This document shows positions 6,819-53,325 of a stretch of DNA of 64,000 bases, in pieces. A program made the translations under genes and the position numbers. The stretch lies in IMG/VR virus record IMGVR_UViG_3300043399_000877, positions 310,001-374,000 of that record, one strand, 5' to 3'. Numbering within the stretch: position 1 is the stretch's first letter; each line of letters opens with the position of its first letter. Below the pieces are notes generated by a model. It did not search any database, had not been told where the DNA came from, and saw only the letters and a list, made by a program, of their open reading frames with translations.

Positions 6819-6819
6819 T

Positions 6820-40747: not shown

Positions 40748-41050
40748 TCAGCGTGACGGGAAGTCAACAGGTTTTTTGACGGCGGCGCGGCGTTCTTCCA
40801 TAGTCATGGGTTCTCTGGGTTCTTCAGTCCAGTGACCGCCCCAGCGTCTCCGCTGATTTTCTTCGTATGTCAACTCTTTGCTAAGATATTCGCCACTCCA
40901 ACTGTCAATTACGTCAGCCATTTCGTACAGTGCTGCAATCACACTGTTTTGATCTCCCCAACCGTATTCCATATAAGAGTTAGAATTGCGAGCATTGAGG
41001 AACGCTGCACGTTCTCTCATAGCGTCTGCTAGGCTTTTCGGGTCTTTCAT
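40748..41050 (-). CDS. Hypothetical protein
   Basis: ORF in operon. Confidence 0.55.
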   Translation of the reverse strand: MKDPKSLADAMRERAAFLNARNSNSYMEYGWGDQNSVIAALYEMADVIDSWSGEYLSKELTYEENQRRRWGGHWTEEPREPMTMEERRAAVKKPVDFPSR

Positions 41051-41385
41051 TGGGTTGCACTGCTCCATTTTAAGCTAAAGAATGTTGCATCTCGTTCGTC
41101 TTTAAAATACCAACAGTTACTATAAATTCGATACTCGTCTTTAATAAATTGTCTGCACCATTCATCGCTTATTTTTGCTTTAGTATGCTGTATTACTTCG
41201 GTCCAACCTTGAGATTTTAGTGTAGCCTTTTCGACTTCTCTTAAGACTTCTCGATCAAGTTCTTCTTGTAATATTTTGGCAAGATTGTCGTTTATTTCTG
41301 TGTAAAGATCATCTGCCTTCTCGACGGTCCAAGTTGCTTTCAGAGTTCTGCTTTTTGCTAGTACAACTGTTTTTTCTATTTTCAT
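41047..41385 (-). CDS. Major-capsid-protein (gp23) fragment fused to small paralog domain
   Basis: IEKTVVLAKSRTLKATWTVE...LAKILQEELDREVL resembles T4 gp23 IDKQVIEAKSRQLKAAYSIE...EINREV; C-terminal FKDERDATFFSLKW. Confidence 0.75.
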   Translation of the reverse strand: MKIEKTVVLAKSRTLKATWTVEKADDLYTEINDNLAKILQEELDREVLREVEKATLKSQGWTEVIQHTKAKISDEWCRQFIKDEYRIYSNCWYFKDERDATFFSLKWSSATQ

Positions 41386-41398
41386 TCACTCCACCTCA

Positions 41399-41602
41399 TC
41401 ACTCCCCCGTATACTTTAACATCATTAGCAACATTTCTGACTCACTCTGCACTCGCCTAATATCCGGATATTTTTCAAAGAATCCTTCGCTCGCCTGACC
41501 GGGTTTACAATGCCATACTTTGCTAGCAGTCCAGTCAAATTCTGCCCAATATCCAGTGTCGGGATCAGACAACCGCATCTTGTTTATACGAGTGATTTTC
41601 AT
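41399..41602 (-). CDS. Small paralog-family protein
   Basis: C-terminal SESEMLLMMLKY. Confidence 0.55.
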   Translation of the reverse strand: MKITRINKMRLSDPDTGYWAEFDWTASKVWHCKPGQASEGFFEKYPDIRRVQSESEMLLMMLKYTGE

Positions 41603-41835
41603 TAACCGAACCTTAAAATAAACATGATAGCGTCCCGCTCATTTTCAAAAAGAAAATACCCCACACTGCCTTCAGCGAAGTCAACTTCATATACAAAAGT
41701 TGCACCGAACTTTTGTTTAATATAATCACGAAAAATGCTATCCGATTCGGGATTTTCTTTAAGATAGCGATTTAAGTTTTGATTTTCTTGAACATCTGCA
41801 AAGTATCGCCCGCTCGTTACTTTTATCATGACCAC
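41602..41835 (-). CDS. Small paralog-family protein
   Basis: FENERDAIMFILRFG. Confidence 0.7.
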   Translation of the reverse strand: MVMIKVTSGRYFADVQENQNLNRYLKENPESDSIFRDYIKQKFGATFVYEVDFAEGSVGYFLFENERDAIMFILRFG

Positions 41836-42257
41836 CTCAACAAAAACAAAATATAGTCTCGTTCGTCTTTAAAAGCAAAGAACAATTCGTCACTGCCACC
41901 GATTCCGTTGGGAAGGTATTGTCCTTCGTGGTCCATTATTACACGTTCCCAATGCCAACGGAATTTACCTCGGCAATTTTGATTGCACCAATTGGCAATA
42001 CGTTCACCATTCCAGTATTCACCCCACATAGCATCAAAATTCCAATCAAGATTGCGATACGGTACATGTGCAATATACGGATATCCAAATAACTGGTCTT
42101 TGACAGTATCGCCACGCTCGTTAAAATCAGGATCATATCTCCTAAAATAACGTTCCCAGGTCTGGCAACCGCTCCGTTCGAGCGCGCGGTCCCAACTGCG
42201 TTCAAGTAACAGATATTTTATCCATAAAAATGGGTTGCGGGGTCTTATATCTTTCAT
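41826..42257 (-). CDS. Paralog-family protein
   Basis: WCNQNC...FKDERDYILFLLRWS. Confidence 0.7.
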   Translation of the reverse strand: MKDIRPRNPFLWIKYLLLERSWDRALERSGCQTWERYFRRYDPDFNERGDTVKDQLFGYPYIAHVPYRNLDWNFDAMWGEYWNGERIANWCNQNCRGKFRWHWERVIMDHEGQYLPNGIGGSDELFFAFKDERDYILFLLRWS

Positions 42258-42640
42258 GTTTGGGGCCATCGTAGACTGAACAACAGTGCATCGCGTTCGT
42301 ATGCAAACCAAAAGTCATTCATGCTGCGAATATATGTGCCCGGTTTAAACGTTTTCCGACACCATTCTTTTGCTTCAATTACATCGCTGTAACGGATTCG
42401 GAATTTTTCGTATCCCAGAGACGTAATATAATCCGGATGATGAGCAATACGGCGATTGTAAATTTTTAAGAAATGACCAAAATGCGACTTCGTTAGAACA
42501 ACCCTTCCGCTGTAACCGGTTTTGCTGGTAAGAATATCTATAATCGGACCAGTCATGGGTTGAACGCCCAAGATATCTTGTGCAATTATGGTTGGCATCA
42601 CCCTGCGTATAATAGGTATTAAAACTTTTGCGTCTGACAT
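42254..42640 (-). CDS. Gol-like major-capsid fragment fused to small paralog domain
   Basis: VLIPIIRRVMPTIIAQDILGVQPMTGP resembles gp23 Gol region; C-terminal FAYERDALLFSLRW. Confidence 0.78.
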   Translation of the reverse strand: MSDAKVLIPIIRRVMPTIIAQDILGVQPMTGPIIDILTSKTGYSGRVVLTKSHFGHFLKIYNRRIAHHPDYITSLGYEKFRIRYSDVIEAKEWCRKTFKPGTYIRSMNDFWFAYERDALLFSLRWPQT

Positions 42641-42861
42641 TCCGTTGCCCGCTTTTGTCCACCGCGCCGAAAGTCCCAGCCTTGGCCTCCCATTGCTTCA
42701 AGACTTTTCCACATTTCAGCGATCTCAACGCATTGCCGTGGCTGTCCGATGCTGCCTACCATTGCAAAACAACTGGTACAGCGATAACCCATTTCACTGG
42801 GGATATCGAATTCAGCTGTGCTTCCACAGGGTAAAAATATTTGAGTTGGTGTTGGTATCAT
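42619..42861 (-). CDS. Cys-rich hypothetical protein
   Basis: LPCG...YRCTSCFAMVGSIGQP..C. Confidence 0.6.
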   Translation of the reverse strand: MIPTPTQIFLPCGSTAEFDIPSEMGYRCTSCFAMVGSIGQPRQCVEIAEMWKSLEAMGGQGWDFRRGGQKRATECQTQKF

Positions 42862-42865
42862 GTCG

Positions 42866-43105
42866 TTAACCGTGTTTGAGAATGAATATTGTTAAGTAGC
42901 GTTCATCGCCACTAAACTTGAGGTAGCGTCGTTTATTTTTTTGCACAACAGTAAATCCCTGAGTCCAGAGCCAGTCTTCAAATCTTTGATTTTTGGTAGT
43001 GTTGGGATATTGATATTTTTGTGGCCAACGTGTATCGGCCAAACTGTCTCCGTACTTCCACTTTTGATAAACTCGATCTAAAAAATCAGGATCTAGTATT
43101 GTCAT
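42866..43105 (-). CDS. Small paralog-family protein
   Basis: FSGDERYLTIFILKHG; start reassigned to MTILDPD. Confidence 0.6.
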   Translation of the reverse strand: MTILDPDFLDRVYQKWKYGDSLADTRWPQKYQYPNTTKNQRFEDWLWTQGFTVVQKNKRRYLKFSGDERYLTIFILKHG

Positions 43106-43289
43106 TCGGACACCCAAGCAAAAACAGAGTATGGTACCGTTCTTCACTAAATTGCACATAGTAGTCATTGTATATGAACCCAGTGCATGTAATTTTAAAA
43201 GCACTAGGGTCCAAATTTTTTCTTATCCAGGCAACCCGCGCGCGAACAGTTGGATCGTCTTCATCACCCAAGCAGATTTTCATGACCAC
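43086..43289 (-). CDS. Small paralog-family protein
   Basis: FSEERYHTLFLL. Confidence 0.6.
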   Translation of the reverse strand: MVMKICLGDEDDPTVRARVAWIRKNLDPSAFKITCTGFIYNDYYVQFSEERYHTLFLLGCPNDNTRS

Positions 43290-43543
43290 CTCAGCATAAA
43301 AAGCGTAACATACTTTTCATCGGGGAACTCCAAATCAACATACCTGACTGTTTTGACTATAGTATGATTTTGTACGTGAAGTGTTTTACACTTATAAGTT
43401 TCTTCAAGATACCGATATACGGATTTAGTGCCGTTGAGCCCACCGTTTTTTATTAAAACGTGAACAGACTCGTTAACAGCACGTTTCCAAGAACGGTAAA
43501 TAGGGCTATTGGCCCGTAAACCATGATATTGTATCATCCCCAC
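43280..43543 (-). CDS. Small paralog-family protein
   Basis: FPDEKYVTLFMLRWS. Confidence 0.7.
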   Translation of the reverse strand: MGMIQYHGLRANSPIYRSWKRAVNESVHVLIKNGGLNGTKSVYRYLEETYKCKTLHVQNHTIVKTVRYVDLEFPDEKYVTLFMLRWS

Positions 43544-43731
43544 CTCAATCGCACCAGTGTTAGTTTTTTTGGATCATATACCTGAATTCCCTGAGTCTTC
43601 ATTCTAATTTTGATCCAATCATAGTCTTTACCGGCCTGGCCAACACTACATGACAACCAGTCGCACACTTCTTGGTAGTTTGACGCATCTATGTTAAAGA
43701 AAACACAGTTGTCTTCCATAGTTAGCCCCAC
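43534..43731 (-). CDS. Small paralog-family protein
   Basis: WL...G..GKDYDW...DPKKLTLVRLRWG. Confidence 0.65.
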   Translation of the reverse strand: MGLTMEDNCVFFNIDASNYQEVCDWLSCSVGQAGKDYDWIKIRMKTQGIQVYDPKKLTLVRLRWG

Positions 43732-43925
43732 CTCAGCATAAACAACGTGCGTTTGTGATCGTCAAATATTTTTATACCAGCACACTGGTAATCAATAAAA
43801 ATCAGTTGGTAGTCGACATCTTTTTTGCCCATGTTTTGATCAATCCAAGACAGTAAGCCATGATAATAACCGGCCCGTCGCCGTTCAAACATTATAATGT
43901 CGTCTGTTATACTCTCAGATTTCAT
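43722..43925 (-). CDS. Small paralog-family protein
   Basis: WIDQNMG..DVDY...FDDHKRTLFMLRWG. Confidence 0.65.
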   Translation of the reverse strand: MKSESITDDIIMFERRRAGYYHGLLSWIDQNMGKKDVDYQLIFIDYQCAGIKIFDDHKRTLFMLRWG

Positions 43926-44331
43926 AATCCAAGTCGCCAGTGTCGCTCATGTTGTCACGACGGCCGCGCTGGCCGTCGTACTCTAGATGGCGGATATAAT
44001 TACGCAAATATCTTTCGATATTTTCACGGCCCACGGGATTCATGCTATGAACATAGAAATCAAAATCTGCAGGAATTTCGAGGTTCCCGTCCATATGCTG
44101 GTCCACAATCCACTGAGCAATATTGAAGCCAGTGGGCTCGTTGTTGCCGAGGTCGTGATCGAAAGAAATGAAGTTCGGAGCAATTAATCCATGATTGATT
44201 ATGGCTTGAATTGCTTGATCTCGATTGCGCACAACTGTCCACTGCTGCTCACGATAACGCTCTTGCATACGGCGAGGGGCCCAAGTAACGTCCTGCAAAT
44301 TGCGCTCGTCATCAATAAAAAGATTCCACAT
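43915..44331 (-). CDS. Cyclic-phosphate-processing receiver-like domain protein (RNA repair associated)
   Basis: LFIDDER, ISFDHDLG, TG, VHSMNPVG. Confidence 0.75.
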   Translation of the reverse strand: MWNLFIDDERNLQDVTWAPRRMQERYREQQWTVVRNRDQAIQAIINHGLIAPNFISFDHDLGNNEPTGFNIAQWIVDQHMDGNLEIPADFDFYVHSMNPVGRENIERYLRNYIRHLEYDGQRGRRDNMSDTGDLDYEI

Positions 44332-44391: not shown

Positions 44392-44475
44392 TGGTGCCGC
44401 CGGGGAGACTCGAACTCCCACGACCGAAGTCACAAGCACCTCAAGCTTGCGTGGCTACCATTACACCACGGCGGC
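44392..44475 (-). tRNA. tRNA-Leu(GAG)
   Basis: Cloverleaf, long variable arm, loop TT-GAG-GT, encoded CCA. Confidence 0.9.
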
Positions 44476-44492
44476 AATTGTCCTTAATATAA

Positions 44493-44660
44493 TCATTTAA
44501 GTTTTTGTATGGCATCTTCTATTTGTTTCAACGCAAAAGTAGTAAGGAGATACTCACTTCTTTTGTCACATTTGTCGCTTAAGAAAAGTTCTAAGTTACA
44601 AATAGCAGATTTAATATCACCCTCTATTGTACCTTTTGTGTTAATACAGAACAATCCCAT
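44493..44660 (-). CDS. Small hypothetical protein
   Basis: MGLFCINTKG..., SD GAGG. Confidence 0.5.
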   Translation of the reverse strand: MGLFCINTKGTIEGDIKSAICNLELFLSDKCDKRSEYLLTTFALKQIEDAIQKLK

Positions 44661-44675
44661 GTAACTTCCTCTAAA

Positions 44676-44752
44676 TGGTACCCCCGGCAGGACTCTAACC
44701 CACAACCCTCGCGTTCGAAGCGCGATGCTCTATACAATTGAGCTACGGAGGC
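44676..44752 (-). tRNA. tRNA-Arg(TCG)
   Basis: TCGCG-CT-TCG-AA-CGCGA; T-loop TTAGAGT; CCA. Confidence 0.85.
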
Positions 44753-44757
44753 AAAAA

Positions 44758-45006
44758 TTATCTAAGTCGAGGATTCTGGACAAACCGTCCACCGGCACCG
44801 CGAACTTTAGGACGAACTATCTTGTTCGCCTTCATCTGAGTGGCTGCGATATCACATCCGTCATTGAAACTGGGACTGGAACTGTCACATGGATCCAGTT
44901 TATTACGACTACGAGCGTAGCGATATCCAGCGGCATGACCACTGCAATCTTTGGTGCAGGGTCTGCCCTGGAAAGTTAGTTCGGTTATGATATCACGTAA
45001 CAACAT
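44758..45006 (-). CDS. Late-expressed small protein
   Basis: ATAAATACTGT-ATG; CTKDCSGHAAGY. Confidence 0.65.
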   Translation of the reverse strand: MLLRDIITELTFQGRPCTKDCSGHAAGYRYARSRNKLDPCDSSSPSFNDGCDIAATQMKANKIVRPKVRGAGGRFVQNPRLR

Positions 45007-45021
45007 ACAGTATTTATGCCA

Positions 45022-45387
45022 TTACAGCAGTTTTAGATCCCCGGTTATGGGTTGCAGACGCTCGTGCGTGTCTGGGCCCACAGCAATGCAGGTGTTGGTG
45101 GGCGTGCCGTTAAACACAGTCAAGCCTGCGTCCGTGACAAGCTCAGCGATGAGCCCTGCCGCACGGGCGCGATTGTATACGTCCAGCAACTCTTCCTCGC
45201 TGCTGACACCCACTGCAATCTTGGTAAACTTACCTTCTAGCCATTCTTTGACTCTCGGGTCAGCAAAGTTCACAAGAGTGGCTTTCATGCTTGCATGTGC
45301 GCCCTGCGCGATCTCTTTACCACGCGGCATCTTGAGATCTTTTCTCATTACAATAATCTGTTTCATAGCAGTATCCTTAGTCGTCAA
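45022..45387 (-). CDS. Peptidyl-tRNA hydrolase type 2 (Pth2)
   Basis: KQIIVMRKDLKM..GK..AQGAHA, DAGLT, TCIAVGP, ITGDLKLL. Confidence 0.93.
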   Translation of the reverse strand: MTTKDTAMKQIIVMRKDLKMPRGKEIAQGAHASMKATLVNFADPRVKEWLEGKFTKIAVGVSSEEELLDVYNRARAAGLIAELVTDAGLTVFNGTPTNTCIAVGPDTHERLQPITGDLKLL

Positions 45388-46348
45388 CAGTTACTTCGGT
45401 CTTTGTCTTTTTGGTCTTGATCAGGGAGTAGATGACTCCGGCAGCCAAGATAGCAAAGGTTATAGCCAGTGATATCTCCGGTGGAAATTTTGCCAAGCCA
45501 AGAAGATCGGCTATAAAGATTTTGCTTCCTATAAACACTAGAAGTATAGCCAGTGCTGTTTTTAGGTATTCAAATCTGTGCAGTACCGCCGCAAGAGCAA
45601 AGTACAAGGCTCGCAATCCGAGTATTGCAAAAATATTGCTGGTATAGACAATGAACGGATCTGTTGTAATAGCAAAAACAGCAGGCACACTATCGACTGC
45701 AAAAATCAAATCTGCAAGTTCAACAAGAACCAGTGCAAGGAACAGCGGAGTCACAAACCATTTGCCGGCATGTTTTACGAAGAAACTGTTGCCGTGTAGT
45801 CGTTCGGTTACGTTGAATTTTGCCCTCATGAACTTTAGGGCAGGATTGTTTTCCAAGTCTGTTTCGGACTCTTTTACAAACAACATCTTGACGCCGGTAA
45901 AGATCAAGAACGCAGCAAAAATGTAAAGTATCCAACCAAACTGGCTAACAAGCGTTGCACCCAGCCCAATCATAATACCACGAAGGACGATAACGCCCAA
46001 AATACCCCAGAAAAGAACGCGGTGTTGATATTCTTTTGGAATAGAGAAGAAGCTGAAAATAAGAGCTATAACAAAGATGTTATCGAGCGCCAGTGTTTTC
46101 TCTACAACAAAAGCAGTTAGGTATTCAAATGACTGAACTGCACCGATCTGATACCAGACAAAACCGGAAAATGCCAGTCCTATTGCGATATAAACCGCTG
46201 AAAGTCTTAGACTTTCAGCAACACCGATTTCATGAGAATCTCGATGCAAAACACCTAGGTCAAAAACCAGCAGTGCAAGGACGATTGCCAAAAACAGCAA
46301 CCACATCCACACCGGAGTGCCTAGAAAGAGAAGTGTTAAAAATTCCAA
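45377..46348 (-). CDS. TerC/Alx-family membrane protein
   Basis: EKTLALDNIFV, QHRVLFWG, DLIFAVDSVPA, SNIFAILGLRALYF. Confidence 0.93.
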   Translation of the reverse strand: MEFLTLLFLGTPVWMWLLFLAIVLALLVFDLGVLHRDSHEIGVAESLRLSAVYIAIGLAFSGFVWYQIGAVQSFEYLTAFVVEKTLALDNIFVIALIFSFFSIPKEYQHRVLFWGILGVIVLRGIMIGLGATLVSQFGWILYIFAAFLIFTGVKMLFVKESETDLENNPALKFMRAKFNVTERLHGNSFFVKHAGKWFVTPLFLALVLVELADLIFAVDSVPAVFAITTDPFIVYTSNIFAILGLRALYFALAAVLHRFEYLKTALAILLVFIGSKIFIADLLGLAKFPPEISLAITFAILAAGVIYSLIKTKKTKTEVTVDD

Positions 46349-46374
46349 TTATTTTCCCCTGTATGAGTCGTTAT

Positions 46375-46590
46375 TTACTGGTCAGTTCGCCATCTTTTGC
46401 GACAATCTGGACAGAAAAAATCTATCCAATAACTGTCAGCACTAGGGTCATAATTACCGGTGTTGCTGTCATATTTTTTAGTCACACCGGGATGAGTGCA
46501 TAATGCCTGCAACTTCGCAAGTTCATGGGCTAAACGTTCTTCTCTGCGATCGATACTAGCCCATTTACGCCTAACCTGCGCTGGCGTCAT
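46375..46590 (-). CDS. Small Zn-binding hypothetical protein
   Basis: CTH...CPDC. Confidence 0.6.
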   Translation of the reverse strand: MTPAQVRRKWASIDRREERLAHELAKLQALCTHPGVTKKYDSNTGNYDPSADSYWIDFFCPDCRKRWRTDQ

Positions 46591-47015
46591 GATGCAGCCT
46601 CCTTTTCAATATATCGTGAACACTTTGCACGATCCGTCATGTTGCGTTCGGCTAGGTCTTCCCAAAATTTTTCATTTGGTTTTACCACGCTGTACGCGAG
46701 TTGGCCCCCAAAATAGACCAAACACTCTCTGTTGTAGTTGCTGCTGAGAACCACAGTATATGCCGTGCTCACAGCAGCGCCTCCGATGCCCCCGTGCCCG
46801 AGTGCTGTGCTGCCCCAGGTTTGTGGGAACATTCCGATTACGGAAAAATCACGAGTGGTGTGACGACGTGTTTTCTTAACGGTGGCGTTCTTATCACCAC
46901 TTCGGCGGAATTCTTCCCAATCACGAGAGTCGTACTCAATCTCGGAAAATCCCGCGTACTCAGCATGTGCCAAAACTGCGGCAAGTTCTCCGATTGGATT
47001 ATCAGTGTAGGTCAT
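46587..47015 (-). CDS. Conserved hypothetical phage protein
   Basis: FPQTWGSTALG.GGIGG. Confidence 0.7.
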   Translation of the reverse strand: MTYTDNPIGELAAVLAHAEYAGFSEIEYDSRDWEEFRRSGDKNATVKKTRRHTTRDFSVIGMFPQTWGSTALGHGGIGGAAVSTAYTVVLSSNYNRECLVYFGGQLAYSVVKPNEKFWEDLAERNMTDRAKCSRYIEKEAAS

Positions 47016-47358
47016 CGTAAGGTTCTCCTCGAGTGCGCAACACTCTCCATGTGTATTCTTTTTCTACTCGTTCTGCGTAACGTTTGCGCATCCCATCCGG
47101 ATCAGTCATCCAGTATTTCATACCTTCCGGGTGTCCATAGCTGTGCGCTGGCGCATTGAAATTGAGCCAACGAACAATATCCGGAAGTCGCTGGATGTTA
47201 ATATGATCAGCACTGGTGATTGCCCCGTAAAGGTTGTTGCACAACACATTTGTCAAAAAACCTCCGGGCGGTAATCCGTAAACCAGATAGTTATCTAGAG
47301 ATTTTCTAGTGTGTTCCGGAATTTCTCGTCCATAGCTGTCACTATCAAAATCAATCAT
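47002..47358 (-). CDS. Hypothetical protein
   Basis: PPGGFLTNVLCNNL...AD. Confidence 0.65.
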   Translation of the reverse strand: MIDFDSDSYGREIPEHTRKSLDNYLVYGLPPGGFLTNVLCNNLYGAITSADHINIQRLPDIVRWLNFNAPAHSYGHPEGMKYWMTDPDGMRKRYAERVEKEYTWRVLRTRGEPYDDLH

Positions 47359-47764
47359 GCACATTTGTTGTCCCATTCGGAAAAAATACCATGGTTGGCT
47401 TGCCGGTTTTCTTCGCATAGTCGTGCGTATACCAAGTGCCGCCGTTGTTCTGCCACGAATTTTGATATGGCACAACTAACAGCACATCACACTCATTGAC
47501 TATCTGTCTATTTCTTGCGAAATAACTGAGTGGTTCTCGAAAATCGTCTGATCGGTGGTGCGCCCTAAGTTCTGTTTTAATCGGTGGATGACAGACCACC
47601 TTAATACCCATTTCCGCAGCCAATATAGCAACCTGTTCATCTACTCCCACACAGTCTCCGTGATGCAATTCTGTGATGCCGTTTCGACTGGTTAGATAGT
47701 TTCTAACCAGTCGAAACTGTTCATCATTCATTCCGGAACGGGTACCAGTTACGCCAACTTTCAT
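47351..47764 (-). CDS. SLOG/DprA-like nucleotide-binding protein
   Basis: VGVTGTR, HHGDCVGVD, ARNRQIV, GGTWYT. Confidence 0.7.
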   Translation of the reverse strand: MKVGVTGTRSGMNDEQFRLVRNYLTSRNGITELHHGDCVGVDEQVAILAAEMGIKVVCHPPIKTELRAHHRSDDFREPLSYFARNRQIVNECDVLLVVPYQNSWQNNGGTWYTHDYAKKTGKPTMVFFPNGTTNVHD

Positions 47765-48279
47765 TATCTCTCGTTCCATTGTCCAACAATGCTCATAGCA
47801 TGTTTCATATGCTTGTAAAGCAATCCGTTTTCTGGATCAGTTCGTACTAGGCGTTTTTTGCCCAGCACTTCGTCAAATCGATAAGCGTTGTCATCAAACA
47901 AGATGAAGTCACGCACGTCAGTTCCGTAGTTAGCAAGGTACTCTTGAACCTCGTGTGCGCGGTCATTAAGACCTGCACGTTGCCAGATAACGTTATCCGG
48001 ATCAGTTTTCCACGGGCTTGCAAGTTTTCCACGGAAGCCGCTGTTGCCGAAGGCAGCAGAGACCCAGTGCAGCACCATATTGTCATCGTTACGGAGATAA
48101 TTTTTCCAGGTTGACATAAGAACAAACTCAACCGGGTAACGGTCGTGAAGTTTGTTCATGAAATCAACAGCAACCGGGTCAAAGCGATGCCACATTTCAT
48201 AAGTGGCGTTATGTGCATAATGCACACGGCTGCTGGTAAAGACGCCGTCGATGTCTAAAAAAACTAGATATCTGCTCAT
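47764..48279 (-). CDS. HAD-family phosphatase (Swiss-Army-knife RNA repair type)
   Basis: FLDIDGV, STW, R..EV, ILFDD, GL. Confidence 0.8.
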   Translation of the reverse strand: MSRYLVFLDIDGVFTSSRVHYAHNATYEMWHRFDPVAVDFMNKLHDRYPVEFVLMSTWKNYLRNDDNMVLHWVSAAFGNSGFRGKLASPWKTDPDNVIWQRAGLNDRAHEVQEYLANYGTDVRDFILFDDNAYRFDEVLGKKRLVRTDPENGLLYKHMKHAMSIVGQWNER

Positions 48280-48302
48280 AGCACCACACCTTTCTTAGAG
48301 TT

Positions 48303-48331
48303 AATATAGTGTAGATATATCTGTGTGTCAA
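48303..48331 (-). promoter_or_regulatory. Sigma70-type promoter
   Basis: TTGACA-17-TATATT. Confidence 0.7.
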
Positions 48332-48345
48332 GTAAGATTACGATC

Positions 48346-48900
48346 TTACCAGACACTCCAGATGTGTTTTTTACCGAGATAGGTGTCGGGATAGGGAAGA
48401 TAATCCCAGTCTTGATCTTTGAGGACACGACGTTCAAGCTGACGAACAGCGTTGCGAACAGTCTCTTTGCTGAGAGTTTTGTAAGCAGTGTTGCAGCCAG
48501 TTTCGTTGCCGTATCCGTCTCGAGTACGTTTTGCAAATTCGCGACGAGCCCAGTCACGTTCTGCTTCCCAATCAATGTCACAAGGTTCGTAACGGAACTT
48601 GCTAACATAATAACGATAACGTTCGGGCAATGCACGAACATAGCAACTGTACATAATGCTTTCGGGATTGTTCCAACAAAACCAATAGTTTTTGCGGACT
48701 ACCCGGCAGTCAGCTTCGTAACGTGCTTCTGCTGCTGCAACTTCGTGTTGGTATTCTTCCTGAGTTTTCTTCACTTTTTTACGGTGATACATGCCAGGAT
48801 ATCTGGCGGCGCGAAGCGCCAGATCTTTTATATGCTCATCCACGTATTGAGATTCCGATTTGGAATGATCAAACTTGGGTTTACGGTACGTTCTACTCAT
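48346..48900 (-). CDS. Basic hypothetical protein (MSRTYRK start)
   Basis: SD AAGGAG partly inside an upstream hairpin. Confidence 0.7.
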   Translation of the reverse strand: MSRTYRKPKFDHSKSESQYVDEHIKDLALRAARYPGMYHRKKVKKTQEEYQHEVAAAEARYEADCRVVRKNYWFCWNNPESIMYSCYVRALPERYRYYVSKFRYEPCDIDWEAERDWARREFAKRTRDGYGNETGCNTAYKTLSKETVRNAVRQLERRVLKDQDWDYLPYPDTYLGKKHIWSVW

Positions 48901-48908
48901 TTTGACTC

Positions 48909-48957
48909 CTTATAAGCTATTAGCTCATAAGTCGTCGTAAAACTTTCTGTATCTCAT
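48909..48957 (-). promoter_or_regulatory. 10-codon uORF (MRYRKFYDDL) plus SD-occluding hairpin
   Basis: uORF 48957-48925; 10-bp stem CTTATGAGCT/AGCTTATAAG. Confidence 0.55.
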
Positions 48958-48972
48958 TTCGTTTCCTTTATT

Positions 48973-49077
48973 TGGTGGAGAGGGATGGAATCGAACCATC
49001 GACGCGGCAAGTTACCAGCCTGCCCGCTCTACCCAGACCAACTTCAAGATTGGTGATCTTGCTGAGCTACCGTCTCC
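48973..49077 (-). tRNA. Atypical tRNA-Thr(GGT)-like RNA with D-loop insertion
   Basis: GCTC/GAGC D-stem with 34-nt loop, 6-bp anticodon stem with CT-GGT-AA loop, normal T-arm, CCA. Confidence 0.6.
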
Positions 49078-49084
49078 GTTATTT

Positions 49085-49160
49085 TGGCGCCCCCGGCAGG
49101 AGTCGAACCCACAACCTAGGGAGTAGAAATCCCTTGCTCTTCCAGTTGAGCTACGAAGGC
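49085..49160 (-). tRNA. tRNA-Arg(TCT)
   Basis: AGGGA-TT-TCT-AC-TCCCT; CCA. Confidence 0.92.
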
Positions 49161-49393
49161 ATGTCATTTAGTAATTCATTTAGAACTGCGTCAACCAGTT
49201 CTTCTACGAACTCATCTTCTTCACTTGCGAGTACAAAATCGTCTGCACTCATAGTACCAACCACCCATGCATCCCAGTGCCGTGTGCAAAACATTGCATC
49301 AGACAAAGATTCTCTAACGCGGTCTCGGAGTCGCCGTTTTAACGGCTCCGACACAGTTGCAATCAGGGCACGTCGGTCAAGTGCAGTGGTCAC
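49151..49393 (-). CDS. Hypothetical protein
   Basis: CTRHWDAWVVGTMSADDF motif; stop lies within tRNA-Arg(TCT). Confidence 0.65.
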   Translation of the reverse strand: MTTALDRRALIATVSEPLKRRLRDRVRESLSDAMFCTRHWDAWVVGTMSADDFVLASEEDEFVEELVDAVLNELLNDMPS

Positions 49394-49833
49394 AACACGT
49401 AAACCACTGGTTCAACGTCAGTCATTTCATCTTCGATGATCTGACTGATAATGTTCCAATTCCCGCCGCCGAGCCCAGCACCGATTTGCGGCATAGCAAC
49501 CTGCGTTTCACCACTTTGACGAAGAACGCTGTTGATGGTGCGCATACAATCAGCCACTGCTTCGTAGTTCACAAAACGACTACCGTCTCGACCATACAAA
49601 TGCTGAGTAATTGCGTTGATGATTACTTTGCCATTTGAAGGTACAAACTGTACATCACCCAGCTTGAGGCCATGCTCGTCGTACTGCTCAACATAAAACC
49701 GGTATGCGTCAAAGTGGTCGTCACGAACTATACGTGCAACACCTGAACCCATAACGCCCTGGGCATTGCAACCGTGTGCAATGTGCAGGATGTCGGTCTC
49801 GAAAAGATTGCCCTTGCGGTATTGGATTTTCAT
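49390..49833 (-). CDS. Macro domain (ADP-ribose processing) protein
   Basis: GNLF, HGCNAQGVMGSGVA, MPQIGAGLGGGNW. Confidence 0.9.
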   Translation of the reverse strand: MKIQYRKGNLFETDILHIAHGCNAQGVMGSGVARIVRDDHFDAYRFYVEQYDEHGLKLGDVQFVPSNGKVIINAITQHLYGRDGSRFVNYEAVADCMRTINSVLRQSGETQVAMPQIGAGLGGGNWNIISQIIEDEMTDVEPVVYVL

Positions 49834-49836
49834 CTT

Positions 49837-49950
49837 TTACTTCCGGAAAAGATTGGTAACTTTTGCTTGCAGGTCTTTTGCCCATTGCGGCTGAGGAAGG
49901 TTCCAACCAATACCCAGTCCGATAGCGATTCCAACTGCTAGTGTAAACAT
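49837..49950 (-). CDS. 37-aa membrane peptide
   Basis: Hand-translated MFTLAVGIAIGLGIGWNLPQPQWAK...; SD AAGGAG; promoter upstream. Confidence 0.65.
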   Translation of the reverse strand: MFTLAVGIAIGLGIGWNLPQPQWAKDLQAKVTNLFRK

Positions 49951-49972
49951 CTGTGTCTCCTTTGTTAACTGT

Positions 49973-50001
49973 AATATAGTGCCGGGTGTTGCTGTTGTCA
50001 A
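49973..50001 (-). promoter_or_regulatory. Sigma70-type promoter
   Basis: TTGACA-17-TATATT. Confidence 0.7.
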
Positions 50002-50013
50002 GCAACAATACGA

Positions 50014-50586
50014 TTAATCGTCTATTGCCAATGGATCTGTGATAACTGGAACCGATCCACGAAACATAAGATTTGATATTCCGAAATCTAAATCATATTG
50101 CCCGTGTTGTTTTAATTTTTCCAATACTGCCATGATTTCTGGATAAGACCTTGATATATCAGCAACTACTCGTTGATACTGGTCACGATCTCTTCCATCA
50201 TTTGAGAGTATGTAATCGATCATATTGAACACATTACGATTATCTGTGCTGCGCGGATCAAAACTATCAAGCCGTTCCATTCTCACTACGCGAAAGTTGT
50301 TGGGAAGTTTTATAATATTTCCACGAAGTTTTGGAACATGAGGGTTCCCGCGTAGCTGCATAATGTACTGTAAATACTGATCATAACCGGCGTCGTTTTT
50401 ATAAATTTTAACAACGTAATCGGCGCCCGGTTTAGCCAACACATGGGCATATAATCCGCTCCCCAAAGATTCAAACTCAAATCCACGCTGCTGTAGTTGT
50501 TTGACGTAATCTTCTACGCCCAAGACCTCTTGGGCAGAAGCATACGCTGGGTTTTTTCTGTATCCGGTTAATTCACGTAATCGCAT
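50014..50586 (-). CDS. Protein-kinase-like protein (T7 gp0.7-like)
   Basis: LGSGLYAHV, VVKI, HVPK, MERL, DFGISNLM, ITDP; TATAAATACTGT-ATG start. Confidence 0.7.
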   Translation of the reverse strand: MRLRELTGYRKNPAYASAQEVLGVEDYVKQLQQRGFEFESLGSGLYAHVLAKPGADYVVKIYKNDAGYDQYLQYIMQLRGNPHVPKLRGNIIKLPNNFRVVRMERLDSFDPRSTDNRNVFNMIDYILSNDGRDRDQYQRVVADISRSYPEIMAVLEKLKQHGQYDLDFGISNLMFRGSVPVITDPLAIDD

Positions 50587-50600
50587 ACAGTATTTATATT

Positions 50601-50678
50601 TGGTACTCCCGAGAGGATTCGAACCCCTGACCTTCGCGTTCGTAGCGCGACGCTCTAATTCCACTGAGCTACGGGAGT
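50601..50678 (-). tRNA. tRNA-Arg(ACG)
   Basis: TCGCG-CT-ACG-AA-CGCGA; CCA. Confidence 0.92.
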
Positions 50679-50679
50679 A

Positions 50680-51162
50680 TTAATTTATCGATCGATTATC
50701 GGCAAATTGAATAGTTTTTCCAACATAGTTGGCTTCGGCACCGGTCATCATAGCGCGACCGGAGGATTCCAGATCCCAAACAAAATCTGCCATAAATTCT
50801 TGAATGTCTCCGGTCACCTTTTTTAGTTTGTTGACCACCGCTGCGTTTATTGGTCTTACAGCTTCCAATTCTTGCTGGACTTCTGGTGGCAGGTTTCCCG
50901 TCACCGGTACCCATTGTGGTGGATTGGCGTTTCCGAGTTCTGAATGTATTTTGCCCATAACACCGGTTTGGGGGTCATACTCGGTACCCTTGGTTGACTC
51001 ATCTTCAACAGCATTTGCAAGCATCATGAATGTTCTTGCAACGTCCGGTGCAGCTTTAATCAACCAAACATCACCGTCTGCAAATTCATCTATATAACCT
51101 ATGAGAACAGTATTTGCACTTTCATTAATACTGTCTAATTTATTCAGTAATGATCTAAACAC
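50680..51162 (-). CDS. Late hypothetical protein
   Basis: ATAAATA, SD AAGGAG, GTG start MFRSLLNKLDSINES. Confidence 0.65.
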   Translation of the reverse strand: MFRSLLNKLDSINESANTVLIGYIDEFADGDVWLIKAAPDVARTFMMLANAVEDESTKGTEYDPQTGVMGKIHSELGNANPPQWVPVTGNLPPEVQQELEAVRPINAAVVNKLKKVTGDIQEFMADFVWDLESSGRAMMTGAEANYVGKTIQFADNRSIN

Positions 51163-51197
51163 AGCGACTCCTTTTTTATTATTTATGTGAAAGTCTC

Positions 51198-51272
51198 TGG
51201 TGCAGCCTGGAGGATTTGAACCTCCGACATCTGTCGAGTCAGGACAGCGCTCTACCACTGAGCTAAGGCTGC
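51198..51272 (-). tRNA. tRNA-Val(GAC)
   Basis: CTGTC-CT-GAC-TC-GACAG; CCA. Confidence 0.88.
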
Positions 51273-51273
51273 A

Positions 51274-51351
51274 TGGAACTGGCTGGGGGATTTGAACCCG
51301 CCGCTACAAGATCCACAATCTTGTGTGCTAAACCGCTAACACTAAACCAGC
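51274..51351 (-). tRNA. tRNA-His(GTG)
   Basis: CAAGA-TT-GTG-GA-TCTTG; G1:U72, no G-1. Confidence 0.88.
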
Positions 51352-51355
51352 ATTA

Positions 51356-51547
51356 TTAGATTACAATGAACTTGTGATCAGTCAATTCTTCTCTAAGAAC
51401 AAAGTCCTCGTCGAGTTTTACAACTTGCCCTTCTAAAACTCGTTCAATAAGTTTCTTGCTCTCTGCAAGGCTCATTCCAGTGTGCTGTCTCACAGACAGT
51501 ATAGCACTATATGAATTTGCGCCTTTTTTAAAACCTATGATTTGCAT
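51356..51547 (-). CDS. Ribosomal protein L7/L12 C-terminal-like domain
   Basis: AILSVRQHTGMSLAESKKLIE resembles VIK.VR..TGLGLKEAK.LVE. Confidence 0.65.
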   Translation of the reverse strand: MQIIGFKKGANSYSAILSVRQHTGMSLAESKKLIERVLEGQVVKLDEDFVLREELTDHKFIVI

Positions 51548-51563
51548 ACCGATACTCCTCTAT

Positions 51564-51634
51564 TGGTGCCCCCTGTAGGAATCGAACCTACCGATCCGGG
51601 CTTAGGACGCCTGAGCCGGCCCAGCGGAGAGGGC
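51564..51634 (-). tRNA. Atypical tRNA-Arg(CCT) with reduced D-arm
   Basis: 7-bp acceptor, loop GT-CCT-AA, GTAGG-TTCGATT-CCTAC, CCA; 71 nt. Confidence 0.6.
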
Positions 51635-51640
51635 TAAATT

Positions 51641-51718
51641 TGGCGGATAAGGTTGGACTCGAACCAACAACGCAAGGCCTCAACCTGGCACCCGCTCTAC
51701 CTCTTGAGCTACCGATCC
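51641..51718 (-). ncRNA. tRNA-like RNA with degenerate anticodon arm (GTT-centred loop)
   Basis: Canonical D- and T-arms and CCA; anticodon arm GCC-AGGTTGA-GGC irregular. Confidence 0.55.
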
Positions 51719-51729
51719 GCATAATATTT

Positions 51730-51879
51730 TGTCAGCGAACTACAAGCTGGTGGACTCGAACGCACCATCGCCGGCTGTACGCCGGTGTCCTATCCTTTAG
51801 ACGAAACTTCAATCTTATCAGCACTTTTCCGCACCCCGGCGTGGGTTGGGAAGTTACTGGCAACAAAGGTTCGCTGACA
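51730..51879 (-). ncRNA. About 150-nt structured RNA containing a tRNA-like domain
   Basis: Perfect 11-bp closing stem TGTCAGCGAAC/GTTCGCTGACA enclosing a hairpin and D/anticodon/T-like arms; no CCA. Confidence 0.6.
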
Positions 51880-51902
51880 TGGACGATCGCCGCGCCCTAA
51901 CT

Positions 51903-51979
51903 TGGTTGTCCCTCTCGGAGTCGAACCGAGGACCCCAGTCTTATCAGGACTGTGCTCTAACCACCTGAGCTAAGGGACA
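51903..51979 (-). tRNA. tRNA-Ile(GAT)
   Basis: CAGTC-CT-GAT-AA-GACTG; CCA. Confidence 0.93.
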
Positions 51980-51987
51980 GAAATTTT

Positions 51988-52064
51988 TGGTGTGCCGGGT
52001 GAGATTTGAACCCACGACCTTGGAGTTAAGAGCTCCCTGCTCTAGACCACTGAGCTACCGGCGC
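51988..52064 (-). tRNA. tRNA-Lys(CTT)
   Basis: GGAG-CT-CTT-AA-CTCC; CCA. Confidence 0.9.
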
Positions 52065-52070
52065 ATTATT

Positions 52071-52137
52071 TGGAAGATACGCTCGCTCTCCCAGCCAGGG
52101 CACTTTCGCTCCCCAACAAAAGCACAAGCGTATCATC
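52071..52137 (-). ncRNA. CCA-ended long hairpin RNA
   Basis: GATACGCTTG/CGAGCGTATC stem, GAAA apical loop, ends TTCCA. Confidence 0.4.
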
Positions 52138-52144
52138 GAAATAA

Positions 52145-52231
52145 TGGTGAACCGGGTAGGATTTGAACCTACGTTGGCATTGCTGCTACAGATTAAAAGT
52201 CTGTCCCCATCGGCCTCTCGGGCACCGGTCC
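52145..52231 (-). tRNA. tRNA-Lys(TTT) with class II (long variable arm) body
   Basis: ACAGA-CT-TTT-AA-TCTGT; variable arm GCA-GCAA-TGC; CCA. Confidence 0.8.
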
Positions 52232-52370
52232 TAATGAATTCTGTGAAGTTTTGCTTTTCACGTTTGCGTTTCGATTTATATGGTTTATCGTGTGCGCCCG
52301 CAACTCGAAACCGTGCTGCGGCCACAAACGGATTCCTCTGTTTAGGAATCTTCTGACGTTTTCGTTTCAT
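52232..52370 (-). CDS. Small basic protein, possible alternative ribosome-rescue factor; no stop before the tRNA
   Basis: MKRKRQKIPKQRNPFVAAARFRVAGAHDKPYKSKRKREKQNFTEFI; frame continues through tRNA genes to 52026. Confidence 0.55.
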
Positions 52371-52512
52371 CTAAAAATCTTTCCTTGTATTTGCGTATAG
52401 CTGCTATCAGTGCCGCTGTGGGCGCGGGTGGTCGGTTACACGCTTCTACGATACGGTCATACTCTTCCTGAGTCAACAGTATCGTCTCGGTCTCCTGATC
52501 GGTCGTCTTCAT
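52342..52512 (-). CDS. DUF1778/TacA-antitoxin C-terminal-like peptide (56 aa)
   Basis: Hand-translated MKTTDQETETILLTQEEYDRIVEACNRPPAPTAALIAAIRKYKERF... Confidence 0.6.
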   Translation of the reverse strand: MKTTDQETETILLTQEEYDRIVEACNRPPAPTAALIAAIRKYKERFLDETKTSEDS

Positions 52513-52645
52513 TTTTTCTACTTCCTGCTCGGTTCATTACTATAAGATATTCTGGATCAGTAACTCCAAAATCTCCGGGATTCTGTATAATCTGCTCCAT
52601 CTGCTGTTCTGACAGCAATGAAAAAAAACTGTTTGATCCAGTCAT
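52457..52645 (-). CDS. Small hypothetical protein
   Basis: SD AGGAG before ATG. Confidence 0.5.
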   Translation of the reverse strand: MTGSNSFFSLLSEQQMEQIIQNPGDFGVTDPEYLIVMNRAGSRKNEDDRSGDRDDTVDSGRV

Positions 52646-52661
52646 TTTTTACTCCTGTTAA

Positions 52662-52737
52662 TGGTCCCCAGGGACGGGATCGAACCGCCGACACCATGCT
52701 CTTCAGGCACGTGCTCTACCAACTGAGCTACCTGGGG
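52662..52737 (-). tRNA. tRNA-Phe(GAA)
   Basis: CGTGC-CT-GAA-GA-GCATG; CCA. Confidence 0.92.
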
Positions 52738-52743
52738 ATTATT

Positions 52744-52829
52744 TGGTGGGTCGTCTAGGAATCGAACCTAGCATGGGAGTTAACCCGGCGGATTTACAAT
52801 CCGCTGCCACACCTTGTAGCATACGACCC
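52744..52829 (-). tRNA. tRNA-Tyr(GTA)
   Basis: GCGGA-TT-GTA-AA-TCCGC; long variable arm; CCA. Confidence 0.9.
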
Positions 52830-53141: not shown

Positions 53142-53160
53142 TTTCAGTTCCTCTTGTGTT

Positions 53161-53238
53161 TGGTAGCCCCAACGGGGATCGAACCCGTTTCTCCAGATTG
53201 AAAGTCTAGTATCCTAACCTGCCGTAGACGATGGGGCC
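53161..53238 (-). tRNA. tRNA-Glu(TTC)
   Basis: CTAGA-CT-TTC-AA-TCTGG; CCA. Confidence 0.92.
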
Positions 53239-53243
53239 ATGTT

Positions 53244-53319: not shown

Positions 53320-53325
53320 GTTATA

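What the first reader, a model, noticed from the sequence alone, without database searches (positions are those of the whole stretch)
41047..43925. Tandem array of about 10 divergent paralogs sharing an F-x-(D/N)-E-(R/K)...F-x-L-(R/K)-W terminus
Seen: C-termini FKDERDATFFSLKW, SESEMLLMMLKY, FENERDAIMFILRF, FKDERDYILFLLRW, FAYERDALLFSLRW, FSGDERYLTIFILKH, FSEERYHTLFLL, FPDEKYVTLFMLRW, YDPKKLTLVRLRW, FDDHKRTLFMLRW, mostly translationally coupled. Outliers at 11202 and 32656. A constant C-terminal module with variable N-terminal payloads (two are capsid fragments) suggests a modular adaptor or decoy-display family docking on one common partner, e.g. the phage ClpA (inference).
Basis: partly seen in the sequence, partly recalled or inferred. 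Interest (0 to 1): 0.7.

Follow-up and report, generated by a model that had tools for sequence, protein, structure and literature searches.

The report
Uncharted phage tail-domain gene array
Nine neighbouring small genes of a 382-kb freshwater jumbo phage end in the same uncatalogued ~50-residue folded domain, two of them carry conserved pieces of the phage's major capsid protein, and what these proteins do is still unknown.

Summary
Window 41047-43925 (minus strand) carries nine genes, not ten, that end in one ~50-aa domain. The domain has a W in its first helix, an F-x-F strand and an E-x-D-A helix cap, and it ends F-x-L-(R/K)-W plus one small residue. The 67-aa ORF at 41399-41602 is not a member, and the outliers at 11202 and 32656 are not supported.

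The similarity is not chance. Leave-one-out and external HMMs recover the members. An exhaustive search finds 674 clusters of small proteins, mostly viral, with the domain at the very C-terminus. AlphaFold gives a confident beta-alpha-beta-beta-alpha fold. Pfam, PHROGs, NCBIfam and PDB have no match, and the fold matches are generic (Z 6.3 or less).

Two N-terminal parts are real pieces of the T4-type major capsid protein. Both fusions recur in relatives under purifying selection.

The last codons (xTG AGG TGG NNA TGA) also serve as the ribosome-binding site and start of the next gene. Cassettes are gained, lost or swapped at these junctions.

Function is inferred only. I read the domain as a stable handle that presents variable peptides, including capsid mimics. 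I found no support for ClpA as the partner, and the self-pairing prediction gave no answer.

The parts
43722..43925 (-). m10, 67 aa; domain 43725-43868; ends FDDHKRTLFMLRWG
   Evidence: (E 2.8e-9). Absent from relative L004.
43534..43719 (-). m9, 61 aa; domain 43537-43680; ends YDPKKLTLVRLRWG
   Evidence: E 3.5e-5. It is 35% identical to m10. Ortholog in L004, dN/dS 0.24.
43280..43537 (-). m8, 85 aa; domain 43283-43432; ends FPDEKYVTLFMLRWS
   Evidence: (E 4e-6). In L004 and run X3 a different 255-nt member replaces it, between 43293 and 43531.
43086..43283 (-). m7, 65 aa; domain ends ...TLFLLGC, where R-W has become G-C. The stop is lost, so the gene reads 7 codons into m6.
   Evidence: E 4.6e-10. 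Orthologs P0002 and P0007 share this ending, while P0091 keeps the canonical FLLRWA.
42866..43105 (-). m6, 79 aa; domain 42869-42994; ends FSGDERYLTIFILKHG
   Evidence: E 1.5e-4. Many orthologs end in LLRWS. Weak local likeness to T4 Cef, below the cut-off.
42619..42861 (-). 80-aa ORF inside the array, not a member; C-x-x...C-x-x-C pattern
   Evidence: No domain hit. Conserved in L004 at 95% aa identity, dN/dS 0.10.
42254..42640 (-). m5, 128 aa. The capsid piece (MCP N-arm, the segment that aligns with T4 gp23 93-122) lies at 42512-42628. A linker follows, then the domain at 42257-42388.
41826..42257 (-). m4, 143 aa. It has its own conserved N-terminal part (two helices and two strands), then the domain at 41829-42011 with a long hairpin.
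   Evidence: pLDDT 88.5; E 3.4e-16
41602..41829 (-). m3, 75 aa; domain 41605-41745; ends FENERDAIMFILRFG
   Evidence: E 7.4e-11. In run X3 a 230-nt alternative replaces it exactly between 41603 and 41832.
41399..41602 (-). m2, 67 aa. It lies in the array but is NOT a member of the family.
   Evidence: (E 540). It is a real gene with orthologs (P0021, and L004).
41047..41385 (-). m1, 112 aa. The capsid piece (MCP strand plus spine helix) lies at 41161-41385. The domain is at 41050-41178.
   Evidence: (hhalign 96.9%, E 1.6e-10)
41826..41840 (-). Example of a junction: TTG AGG TGG TCA TGA. This is the end of the domain (L-R-W-S-stop), the SD sequence GAGGTG, and the ATG of the next gene overlapping the stop. 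The same design is found at 43280, 43534 and 43722.
   Evidence: Recombination breakpoints fall at such junctions.
43915..44331 (-). Upstream neighbour, 138 aa, cREC_REC domain. The first gene of the coupled run after the tRNA cluster.

Best explanation
SHOWN. The stretch is a tandem array of nine small, translationally coupled genes. Their products share a previously uncatalogued C-terminal domain of about 50 residues.
- The predicted fold is a two-layer beta-alpha-beta-beta-alpha sandwich, like an alpha-beta plait that lacks its last strand.
- The conserved residues are core residues: W in helix 1, F-x-F in strand 3, an E-x-D-A helix cap, and F-x-L-(R/K)-W in helix 2. No catalytic-looking polar set is conserved.
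- The family is large. Its annotated relatives are viral, and it is multi-copy in this lineage of jumbo phages.
- The N-terminal halves are unrelated 'payloads'. Two of them are the two best-conserved segments of the T4-type major capsid protein.
- The array changes by gain, loss and replacement of whole genes. Breakpoints lie at the gene junctions. There the last domain codons (xTG AGG TGG NNA TGA) also form the ribosome-binding site and start codon of the next gene.

INFERRED.
- The domain is a small, self-folding handle for binding protein. It lets the phage make, stabilise and co-express short, fast-changing N-terminal peptides.
- The members are accessory binders aimed at host or rival-phage proteins.
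- The two capsid fusions act as mimics of capsid-protein segments. They could be decoys or competitors for whatever binds those segments: a host sensor, EF-Tu, a chaperone, or a neighbouring capsid subunit.
For: Family is real: (674 clusters at E 1e-3 or better among 1.84 billion representatives). The domain ends 0-1 residue from the stop in 145 of 171 hits, with endings LRWS 75, LRWG 18 and LKWS 14.

Fold: m5 residues 75-128 have pLDDT 90-97. The m4 model has mean pLDDT 88.5 and the same topology.

Not catalogued.

Viral and lineage-rich. Sinorhizobium phage Phosso has at least 14 copies. T4, 121Q, RsoM2USA and Atu_ph07 have none at the thresholds used.

Protein-level conservation, independent of the SD: Phosso copies use CGC, AGG or Thr codons at that position.

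SD overlay: AGG makes up 6.4% of Arg codons genome-wide, but 5 of 6 at the L-R-W position.

Genes are under purifying selection, with dN/dS 0-0.24 for m9, m7, m6, m5, m4 and m1.

Cassette flux at junctions.

Capsid pieces. Their recurrence.

The m5 N-part has low pLDDT (44-60), which fits a peptide that folds only on a partner.

Domain charge is near neutral (mean -0.6, median pI 6.2), which argues against a dedicated nucleic-acid binder or DNA mimic.
Against: No partner, no expression timing and no phenotype are known. The function part rests on architecture alone.

The self-pairing prediction gave no answer. Fold matches are generic and carry no function.

The capsid pieces could have begun as debris of partial MCP duplications. 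One such split mini-MCP sits beside a 601-aa DUF7487 protein in relative L027.

m3 has dN/dS 0.72, from few changes.

Part of the terminal motif is constrained by the next gene's SD, so the motif overstates the protein-level constraint in this genome.
Confidence: 0.5

Rival explanations
1. Cis-element hitch-hiking, or a gene nursery. The domain's 3' end persists mainly because it carries the SD and start of the next gene and gives short homology for recombination. New N-termini, including captured capsid debris, are fused onto it. Most members then have no shared function, or no function at all.
For: The SD is encoded in the L-R-W codons. Breakpoints fall at junctions, and one falls inside m1's domain. 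The 3' end of m4 is joined to many different flanks in run X3. Turnover between close relatives is rapid. A split mini-MCP in L027 shows how capsid pieces can arise.
Against: The whole 50-aa fold is conserved, not only its last codons, across hundreds of clusters with different codon usage. dN/dS is well below 1. Both capsid-fusion types persist in distant lineages with MCP-invariant residues kept.
Confidence: 0.15
2. Small RNA-binding proteins. The alpha-beta-plait domain binds RNA, and the members act on tRNA or mRNA.
For: The array lies directly downstream of 15 tRNA genes, a PTH2 peptidyl-tRNA hydrolase and a cREC_REC gene. The best, though weak, fold matches include KH and RRM domains. 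The m6 type shows a weak local match to T4 Cef, E 0.0035. That Cef is a tRNA-processing factor is from my memory.
Against: Z scores are 6.3 or less, within the range the tool calls common for unrelated folds. Domain charge is near neutral and varies widely. The Cef match is below Pfam's cut-off and covers only 24-27 residues. Copies in Phosso are scattered over the genome.
Confidence: 0.12
3. One reading: an adaptor or degron family that docks on the phage ClpA-like unfoldase.
For: A ClpA-like 758-aa gene lies in the window at 4569-6845. A homologue is also present in Phosso, which has the domain. The C-terminus is strictly conserved and free.
Against: ClpA-like genes are also present in Atu_ph07 and 121Q, where the domain profile finds nothing. 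No ClpS-like structural match appeared. The terminal W lies within the last predicted helix of the fold, not on a free tail.
Confidence: 0.06
4. A head-targeting tag. The domain binds the inside of the prohead, so the payloads are packaged and injected, as with T4 internal proteins.
For: The layout is a constant part plus variable payloads, and some payloads derive from the capsid protein. That T4 internal proteins share a capsid-targeting sequence is from my own knowledge.
Against: No link to head genes was found. The MCP gene lies 160 kb away, at genome 188935-190122. The domain shows no homology to MCP. No protease-site evidence was sought.
Confidence: 0.07
5. Chance similarity of composition in unrelated small ORFs.
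For: The members are only 14-35% identical overall.
Against. This reading holds only for m2 and the two outliers.
Confidence: 0.01

Closest known systems
Alpha-beta-plait / ferredoxin-like small domains (RRM, ACT, type I KH, secretin ring-building motif)
   Same: Two-layer sandwich with beta-alpha-beta-beta-alpha order. This is the best structural description of the domain.
   Different: Z scores are only 4-6.3, and Foldseek against PDB gives nothing at E below 1. The last strand is missing, or an N-terminal extension supplies extra strands, as in m4. No sequence relation was found. No RNP motifs were looked for.
T4 major capsid protein gp23 (Pfam PF07068) and its Gol segment, which activates the Lit protease
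   Same: m5 and m1 carry true homologues of two gp23 segments. The m5 piece aligns with T4 gp23 residues 93-122. From memory, that is the Gol peptide. The review PMC3014915 confirms only a 29-residue region in the first quarter of gp23 that binds EF-Tu.
   Different: The pieces cover only 40-84 of the 376 profile positions, so these proteins cannot form a capsid. The shared domain itself is not related to gp23: hhalign probability 0.2%.
Modular shuffling of small ORFs in hyperplastic regions of T4-type phages (PeSL cassettes; Arbiol et al. 2010, from memory)
   Same: Small accessory genes are gained, lost and swapped between close relatives at short conserved boundary sequences.
   Different: Here the boundary is coding. 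It is the end of a protein domain plus the SD and ATGA overlap, not a promoter-stem-loop. No promoter or terminator excess was found.
T4 internal proteins with a shared capsid-targeting sequence (from memory)
   Same: A constant targeting part is joined to variable payloads in small phage accessory proteins.
   Different: That tag is a ~10-residue N-terminal peptide removed by the head protease. This one is a 50-residue folded C-terminal domain. Packaging was not tested.
T4 Cef (Pfam PF24050)
   Same: The m6 type shares a local FED-L...VVQK stretch with Cef.
   Different: Scores are 12-18 bits against a cut-off of 27. Cef lacks the E-x-D-A...L-R-W helix.

Membership tests
The new C-terminal 'LRW' domain family (defined here) | Significant match to a profile built without the sequence itself | tested here: met
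   Met for m1 and m3-m10. Not met for m2 or for the outliers at 11202 and 32656.
The new C-terminal 'LRW' domain family (defined here) | Domain lies at the extreme C-terminus and ends F-x-L-(R/K)-W plus 0-1 small residue | tested here: met
   145 of 171 database hits end 0-1 residue after the domain. In the window, m3, m4, m8, m9 and m10 do. m1 and m5 have 3-4 extra residues. m6 ends KHG. m7 ends GC and reads on 7 codons further.
The new C-terminal 'LRW' domain family (defined here) | Shared beta-alpha-beta-beta-alpha fold | tested here: met
   Modelled with high confidence for m5 and m4. Not modelled for the other seven. Both alignments contain family members, so the models are not independent of the family assignment.
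Pfam PF07068 Gp23 (major capsid protein) | Score over the gathering cut-off | tested here: met
   m1 scores 35.4 bits and m5 37.4 bits, against a cut-off of 24.4.
Pfam PF07068 Gp23 (major capsid protein) | Full-length HK97-type capsid fold | tested here: not met
   Only profile positions 6-44 (m5) and 136-219 (m1) of 376 are matched. The rest of each protein has no detectable homology to the capsid protein. They are fragments, not capsid proteins.
Pfam PF24050 T4_Cef | Score over the gathering cut-off of 27 bits | tested here: not met
   12.3-17.6 bits.
RRM / KH RNA-binding domains | Clear structural match and RNA-binding signature motifs | tested here: inconclusive
   Z is 4-6.3, within the tool's stated background. 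Signature motifs were not examined. Pfam gives no RRM or KH hit.
ClpS-type adaptors of ClpA | ClpS-like fold or sequence, and co-occurrence with ClpA | tested here: not met
   There is no ClpS match by sequence or fold. ClpA-like genes also occur in phages where the domain profile finds nothing. Binding itself cannot be tested here.

The most novel reading that the evidence does not exclude
The domain is a universal docking handle of one jumbo-phage lineage. It presents short peptides to one cellular or viral machine. The two recurrent capsid fusions are evolved mimics of the most conserved capsid segments, including the segment that in T4 binds EF-Tu and triggers Lit. They would be made to blunt host immunity that senses capsid protein, or to sabotage the capsid assembly of rival phages.
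Probability: 0.15. Interest if true: 0.85.

Novelty: new variant of a known kind. Interest (0 to 1): 0.6.

Why it matters
Large phages carry many small genes of unknown function. Here several hundred clusters of them fall into one domain family that the family and structure libraries searched here (Pfam, PHROGs, NCBIfam, PDB sequences) do not hold. The family has a clear fold model and a cultured relative in which it can be studied: Sinorhizobium phage Phosso, with at least 14 copies.

The array also shows a tidy way of building and exchanging genes. The end of a protein domain is at the same time the ribosome-binding site and the joint for swapping cassettes.

If the conserved capsid-segment fusions are mimics, they would be a new kind of phage counter-measure or weapon against rivals. 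They would also offer a handle on what the most conserved part of T4-type capsid proteins binds inside the cell.

Tried and rejected
1. The domain as a shrunken remnant of the capsid protein. A global MAFFT alignment suggested this. hhalign gives probability 0.2%, and no capsid protein appears among the fold matches. Rejected.

2. A terminase fragment as the payload of P0090. The score is no better than shuffled sequences. Rejected.

3. An RF3_C-fragment relative, suggested by the protein atlas at 0.65-0.69. The genome has no RF3_C match. Dropped.

4. Self-pairing of the domain. The complex prediction scored 0.15 against a mark of 0.42. The tool says this is no evidence either way.

5. Known families. 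Pfam, PHROGs, NCBIfam and PDB sequences give nothing for the domain.

6. Named phages. No DNA or protein match in the phage collection except the MCP piece and Phosso. The profile finds nothing in T4, 121Q, RsoM2USA or Atu_ph07.

7. Promoters, terminators and the T4 late-promoter motif. None exceeds chance.

8. Literature. String searches for the motif, and searches for capsid decoys, found nothing relevant.

9. Transcription. One RNA-labelled run holds four short contigs from the array. The tool warns that this does not show transcription.

10. Payload searches against the phage's own proteome. Only the MCP and the members' own orthologs match. A Pfam scan of 44 longer family members found only Gp23, in 2 of them.


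Full report
SETTING. The window is bases 310001-374000 of a single 381,886-bp virus record with 42% G+C. CheckV rates the record complete. Near-identical DNA is held by freshwater metagenome runs, and parts of it by wastewater, aquaculture and other aquatic runs. Almost all genes in the window lie on the minus strand. The major capsid protein (MCP) is of the T4 gp23 type and lies at genome 188935-190122. The closest cultured relative by MCP is Sinorhizobium phage Phosso at 72% identity. Next are Ralstonia phage RsoM2USA at 46% and, by a short DNA match, the 121Q/Rak2 group. Upstream of the finding in transcription order lie 15 tRNA genes, a TerC gene, a PTH2 peptidyl-tRNA hydrolase and a cREC_REC gene. 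A ClpA-like AAA+ gene lies at 4569-6845.

THE OBSERVATION. The junction sequences fix the real starts. m10 is 43722-43925, m9 43534-43719, m8 43280-43537, m7 43086-43283 and m6 42866-43105. An unrelated 80-aa ORF follows at 42619-42861. Then come m5 42254-42640, m4 41826-42257, m3 41602-41829, m2 41399-41602 and m1 41047-41385. Neighbouring genes overlap by ATGA or TAATG, or are 2-13 nt apart.

IS THE SIMILARITY REAL? I tested this in three ways.
- Leave-one-out HMMs, scored against all 6216 six-frame ORFs of the genome, recover m8, m4, m1, m3, m5 and m7 at E below 0.01. They recover m10 and m6 at E 0.02-0.03. m9 scores only E 4.8, and m2 is not recovered at all, at E 540.
- An HMM built from 159 metagenomic relatives, with window-identical sequences removed, finds all nine of m1 and m3-m10 at E 1.5e-4 or better. 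It again misses m2.
- Protein-language-model neighbours of m10 are the same viral clusters as for a consensus-like family member, at score 0.88. m2 reaches only 0.60, and its stored model is poor, with beta-rich neighbours.
The array therefore holds nine members. Three weak copies lie elsewhere in the genome.

HOW FAR THE FAMILY REACHES. A 47-position profile (A2) was scored against 1.84 billion representative proteins. It finds 674 clusters at E 1e-3 or better.
- Members are mostly 50-150 aa long.
- The domain ends at the stop codon, or one residue before it, in 145 of 171 hits. The commonest endings are LRWS (75), LRWG (18) and LKWS (14).
- The consensus reads roughly x-W-C-x-x-N-F-G-x-x-G-x-W...F-y-F-k-d-E-k-D-A-t-l-F-x-L-R-W-S.
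- Three large repetitive proteins in the hit list are spurious.
- Atlas and BFVD neighbours are uncharacterised viral proteins.
- Phosso has at least 14 copies, in several small clusters. T4, 121Q, RsoM2USA and Atu_ph07 give no match at the thresholds used.
- Pfam, PHROGs, NCBIfam and PDB sequences have no entry for the domain. Literature searches for the motif found nothing.

FOLD.
- The AlphaFold2 model of m5, made with an 88-row family alignment, gives pLDDT 90-97 for residues 75-128. The order of elements is strand 78-81, helix 84-97, strands 103-106 and 109-112, then helix 115-124. The capsid-like N-terminus has low confidence, 44-60.
- The m4 model, made with 22 relatives, has mean pLDDT 88.5. 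It shows the same core with a longer hairpin, plus two further strands and two helices from its own N-terminal part.
- Foldseek finds nothing in PDB at E below 1.
- VIA-align gives Z of at most 6.3. The matches are KH, RRM, ACT, secretin N-domains and designed ferredoxins, which the tool's notes place within background.
- AFDB and Atlas searches return only nameless small proteins.
- The nearly invariant residues are aromatic or aliphatic: W93, F112, F121, L123 and W125 of m5. This suggests a structural domain, not a catalytic one.
- Net charge averages -0.6 with a standard deviation of 3, and the median pI is 6.2.

THE TERMINUS HAS TWO JOBS. In m3, m4, m8, m9 and m10 the residues L-R-(W/F) are written xTG AGG TGG, or TTA AGG TTC in m3. 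One codon ending in A follows, then TGA, so that GAGGTG...ATG-A forms the Shine-Dalgarno sequence and start of the next gene. AGG makes up only 6.4% of Arg codons in 322 long ORFs of this genome, but 5 of the 6 Arg codons at this position. SD-like words are five- to six-fold enriched upstream of starts. In Phosso the same position is written CGC, AGG or ACC (Thr), and the residue after W varies, yet L, W and the helix are kept. The motif is therefore ancestral at the protein level. The SD coding is an overlay in this lineage.

THE ARRAY IS IN FLUX. The relatives compared are:
- L004, a syntenic 46-kb contig. It lacks m10, has a different 91-aa member in place of m8, and has two extra members of 84 and 64 aa.
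- L024, which carries an m4-type gene before an m5-type gene, the reverse of the window's order.
In blastn against L004, a 95% identical block runs from 41597 to 43293. That is from the m3/m2 junction to the m8/m7 junction. The flanks are 75-84% identical or replaced. In other metagenomes m3 is replaced by a 230-nt insert exactly between 41603 and 41832, and m8 by 255 nt between 43293 and 43531. The 3' end of m4 is joined to many different flanks. The tool warns that such short joints may come from other organisms or repeats. dS between adjacent orthologous genes ranges from 0.05 to above 1, which fits a mosaic history. dN/dS is 0-0.24 for m9, m7, m6, m5, m4 and m1, so these are working genes. 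m3 gives 0.72, from few changes.

THE CAPSID PIECES.
- m5 residues 5-44 match the phage's own MCP 59-98 at 55% identity. m1 residues 1-48 match MCP 154-209 at 39%. Both exceed Pfam's Gp23 cut-off.
- The m1-type profile aligns to an MCP profile with 96.9% probability, E 1.6e-10.
- The m5 piece aligns with T4 gp23 residues 93-122. From memory, that is the Gol peptide. The review PMC3014915 states only that a 29-residue region in the first quarter of gp23 binds EF-Tu and so triggers the Lit protease.
- Both fusion types recur. There are 16 clusters of full-length m5-type proteins at 45-90% identity, some on contigs of up to 374 kb. Several representatives are of the m1 type. An Atlas cluster of 113 members is of m1 length and carries Gp23 hits. 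The fusions keep MCP-invariant residues such as I-R-R...G-V-Q-P-M.
- A relative (L027) has a recently split mini-MCP of 81 plus 190 aa beside a 601-aa DUF7487 protein. This shows that such pieces can arise by partial duplication of the capsid gene.
- The shared domain itself is not derived from MCP.

HOW IT MOST LIKELY WORKS. The following are shown: a conserved folded C-terminal domain, unrelated N-termini, purifying selection, translational coupling, and cassette exchange at junctions. My reading is inference. I take the domain to be a self-folding, protein-binding handle that stabilises and co-expresses short variable peptides. I take the members to be accessory binders, and the capsid fusions to be mimics of capsid segments. 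I give this about 0.5, with most of the weight on the structural and evolutionary part. The rivals are cis-element hitch-hiking or a gene nursery (0.15), RNA binding (0.12), a head-targeting tag (0.07), a ClpA adaptor (0.06) and chance (0.01). The self-pairing prediction gave no answer. ClpA-like genes do not track the domain.

NOVELTY. Paralogous families of small genes in plastic regions of large phages are a known kind. This domain, its scale, its dual-use junction and the conserved capsid-segment fusions were not found in any library or paper that I could search. I rate it a new variant of a known kind, with interest 0.6.

Noticed in passing
window 45377-46348 (-): A TerC-family membrane protein gene sits between PTH2 and the next gene. 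It is missing at the same spot in the syntenic relative L004, so it is a clean presence/absence difference.
   Followed up: partly
window 44392-53400 (-): A cluster of 15 tRNA genes includes four tRNA-Arg with different anticodons. PTH2 (45022-45387) and a cREC_REC gene (43915-44331) follow it. The result is a neighbourhood of translation and RNA-repair genes just upstream of the array.
   Followed up: partly
genome 69763-72466 (+), outside the window: A second run of small overlapping ORFs has C-termini that look like a degraded version of the motif, for example FAFRSERDRLLASMMI and IYFKSERMITMVQLLL. Only two of them reach E below 0.01 with the family HMM.
   Followed up: partly
window 43086-43105: m7 has G-C where other members have R-W (GGG TGT instead of AGG TGG). 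It has lost its stop, so it runs 7 codons into m6. Relatives share this ending, while one distant ortholog (P0091) keeps the canonical LRWA ending.
   Followed up: yes
window 42619-42861 (-): An 80-aa ORF with a C-x-x...C-x-x-C pattern sits inside the array without the domain. It is conserved in L004 at 95% aa identity with dN/dS 0.10. No family match was found.
   Followed up: partly
L027 3001-5736: A related phage has a split, shortened capsid-protein paralog of 81 aa plus 190 aa, with most of the middle deleted. It lies next to a 601-aa DUF7487 protein with repeated K-Y-G-V motifs. This may be a mobile-element-linked partial duplication of the capsid gene.
   Followed up: partly
window 42866-43105; T4 NC_000866 6273-6482: The m6 type shows a short local likeness to T4 Cef (FED-L...VVQK). 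The score is below Pfam's cut-off.
   Followed up: partly
window 42606: Relative L004 has a 9-nt insertion here. It duplicates three residues (P-I-I) inside the capsid-like segment of m5.
   Followed up: no
window 4569-6845 (-): A ClpA-like two-ring AAA+ protein of 758 aa is encoded by the phage. Homologues occur in Phosso, Atu_ph07 and 121Q, but not in RsoM2USA.
   Followed up: partly
window 41826-42257 and relatives: The m4 type has its own conserved N-terminal part (R-F-L-K-K-H-G-C-x-S-W-x-E-Y...Y-D-P-D...G-Y-P-Y). It appears in more than ten representative clusters. Its model is confident but matches no known structure.
   Followed up: partly
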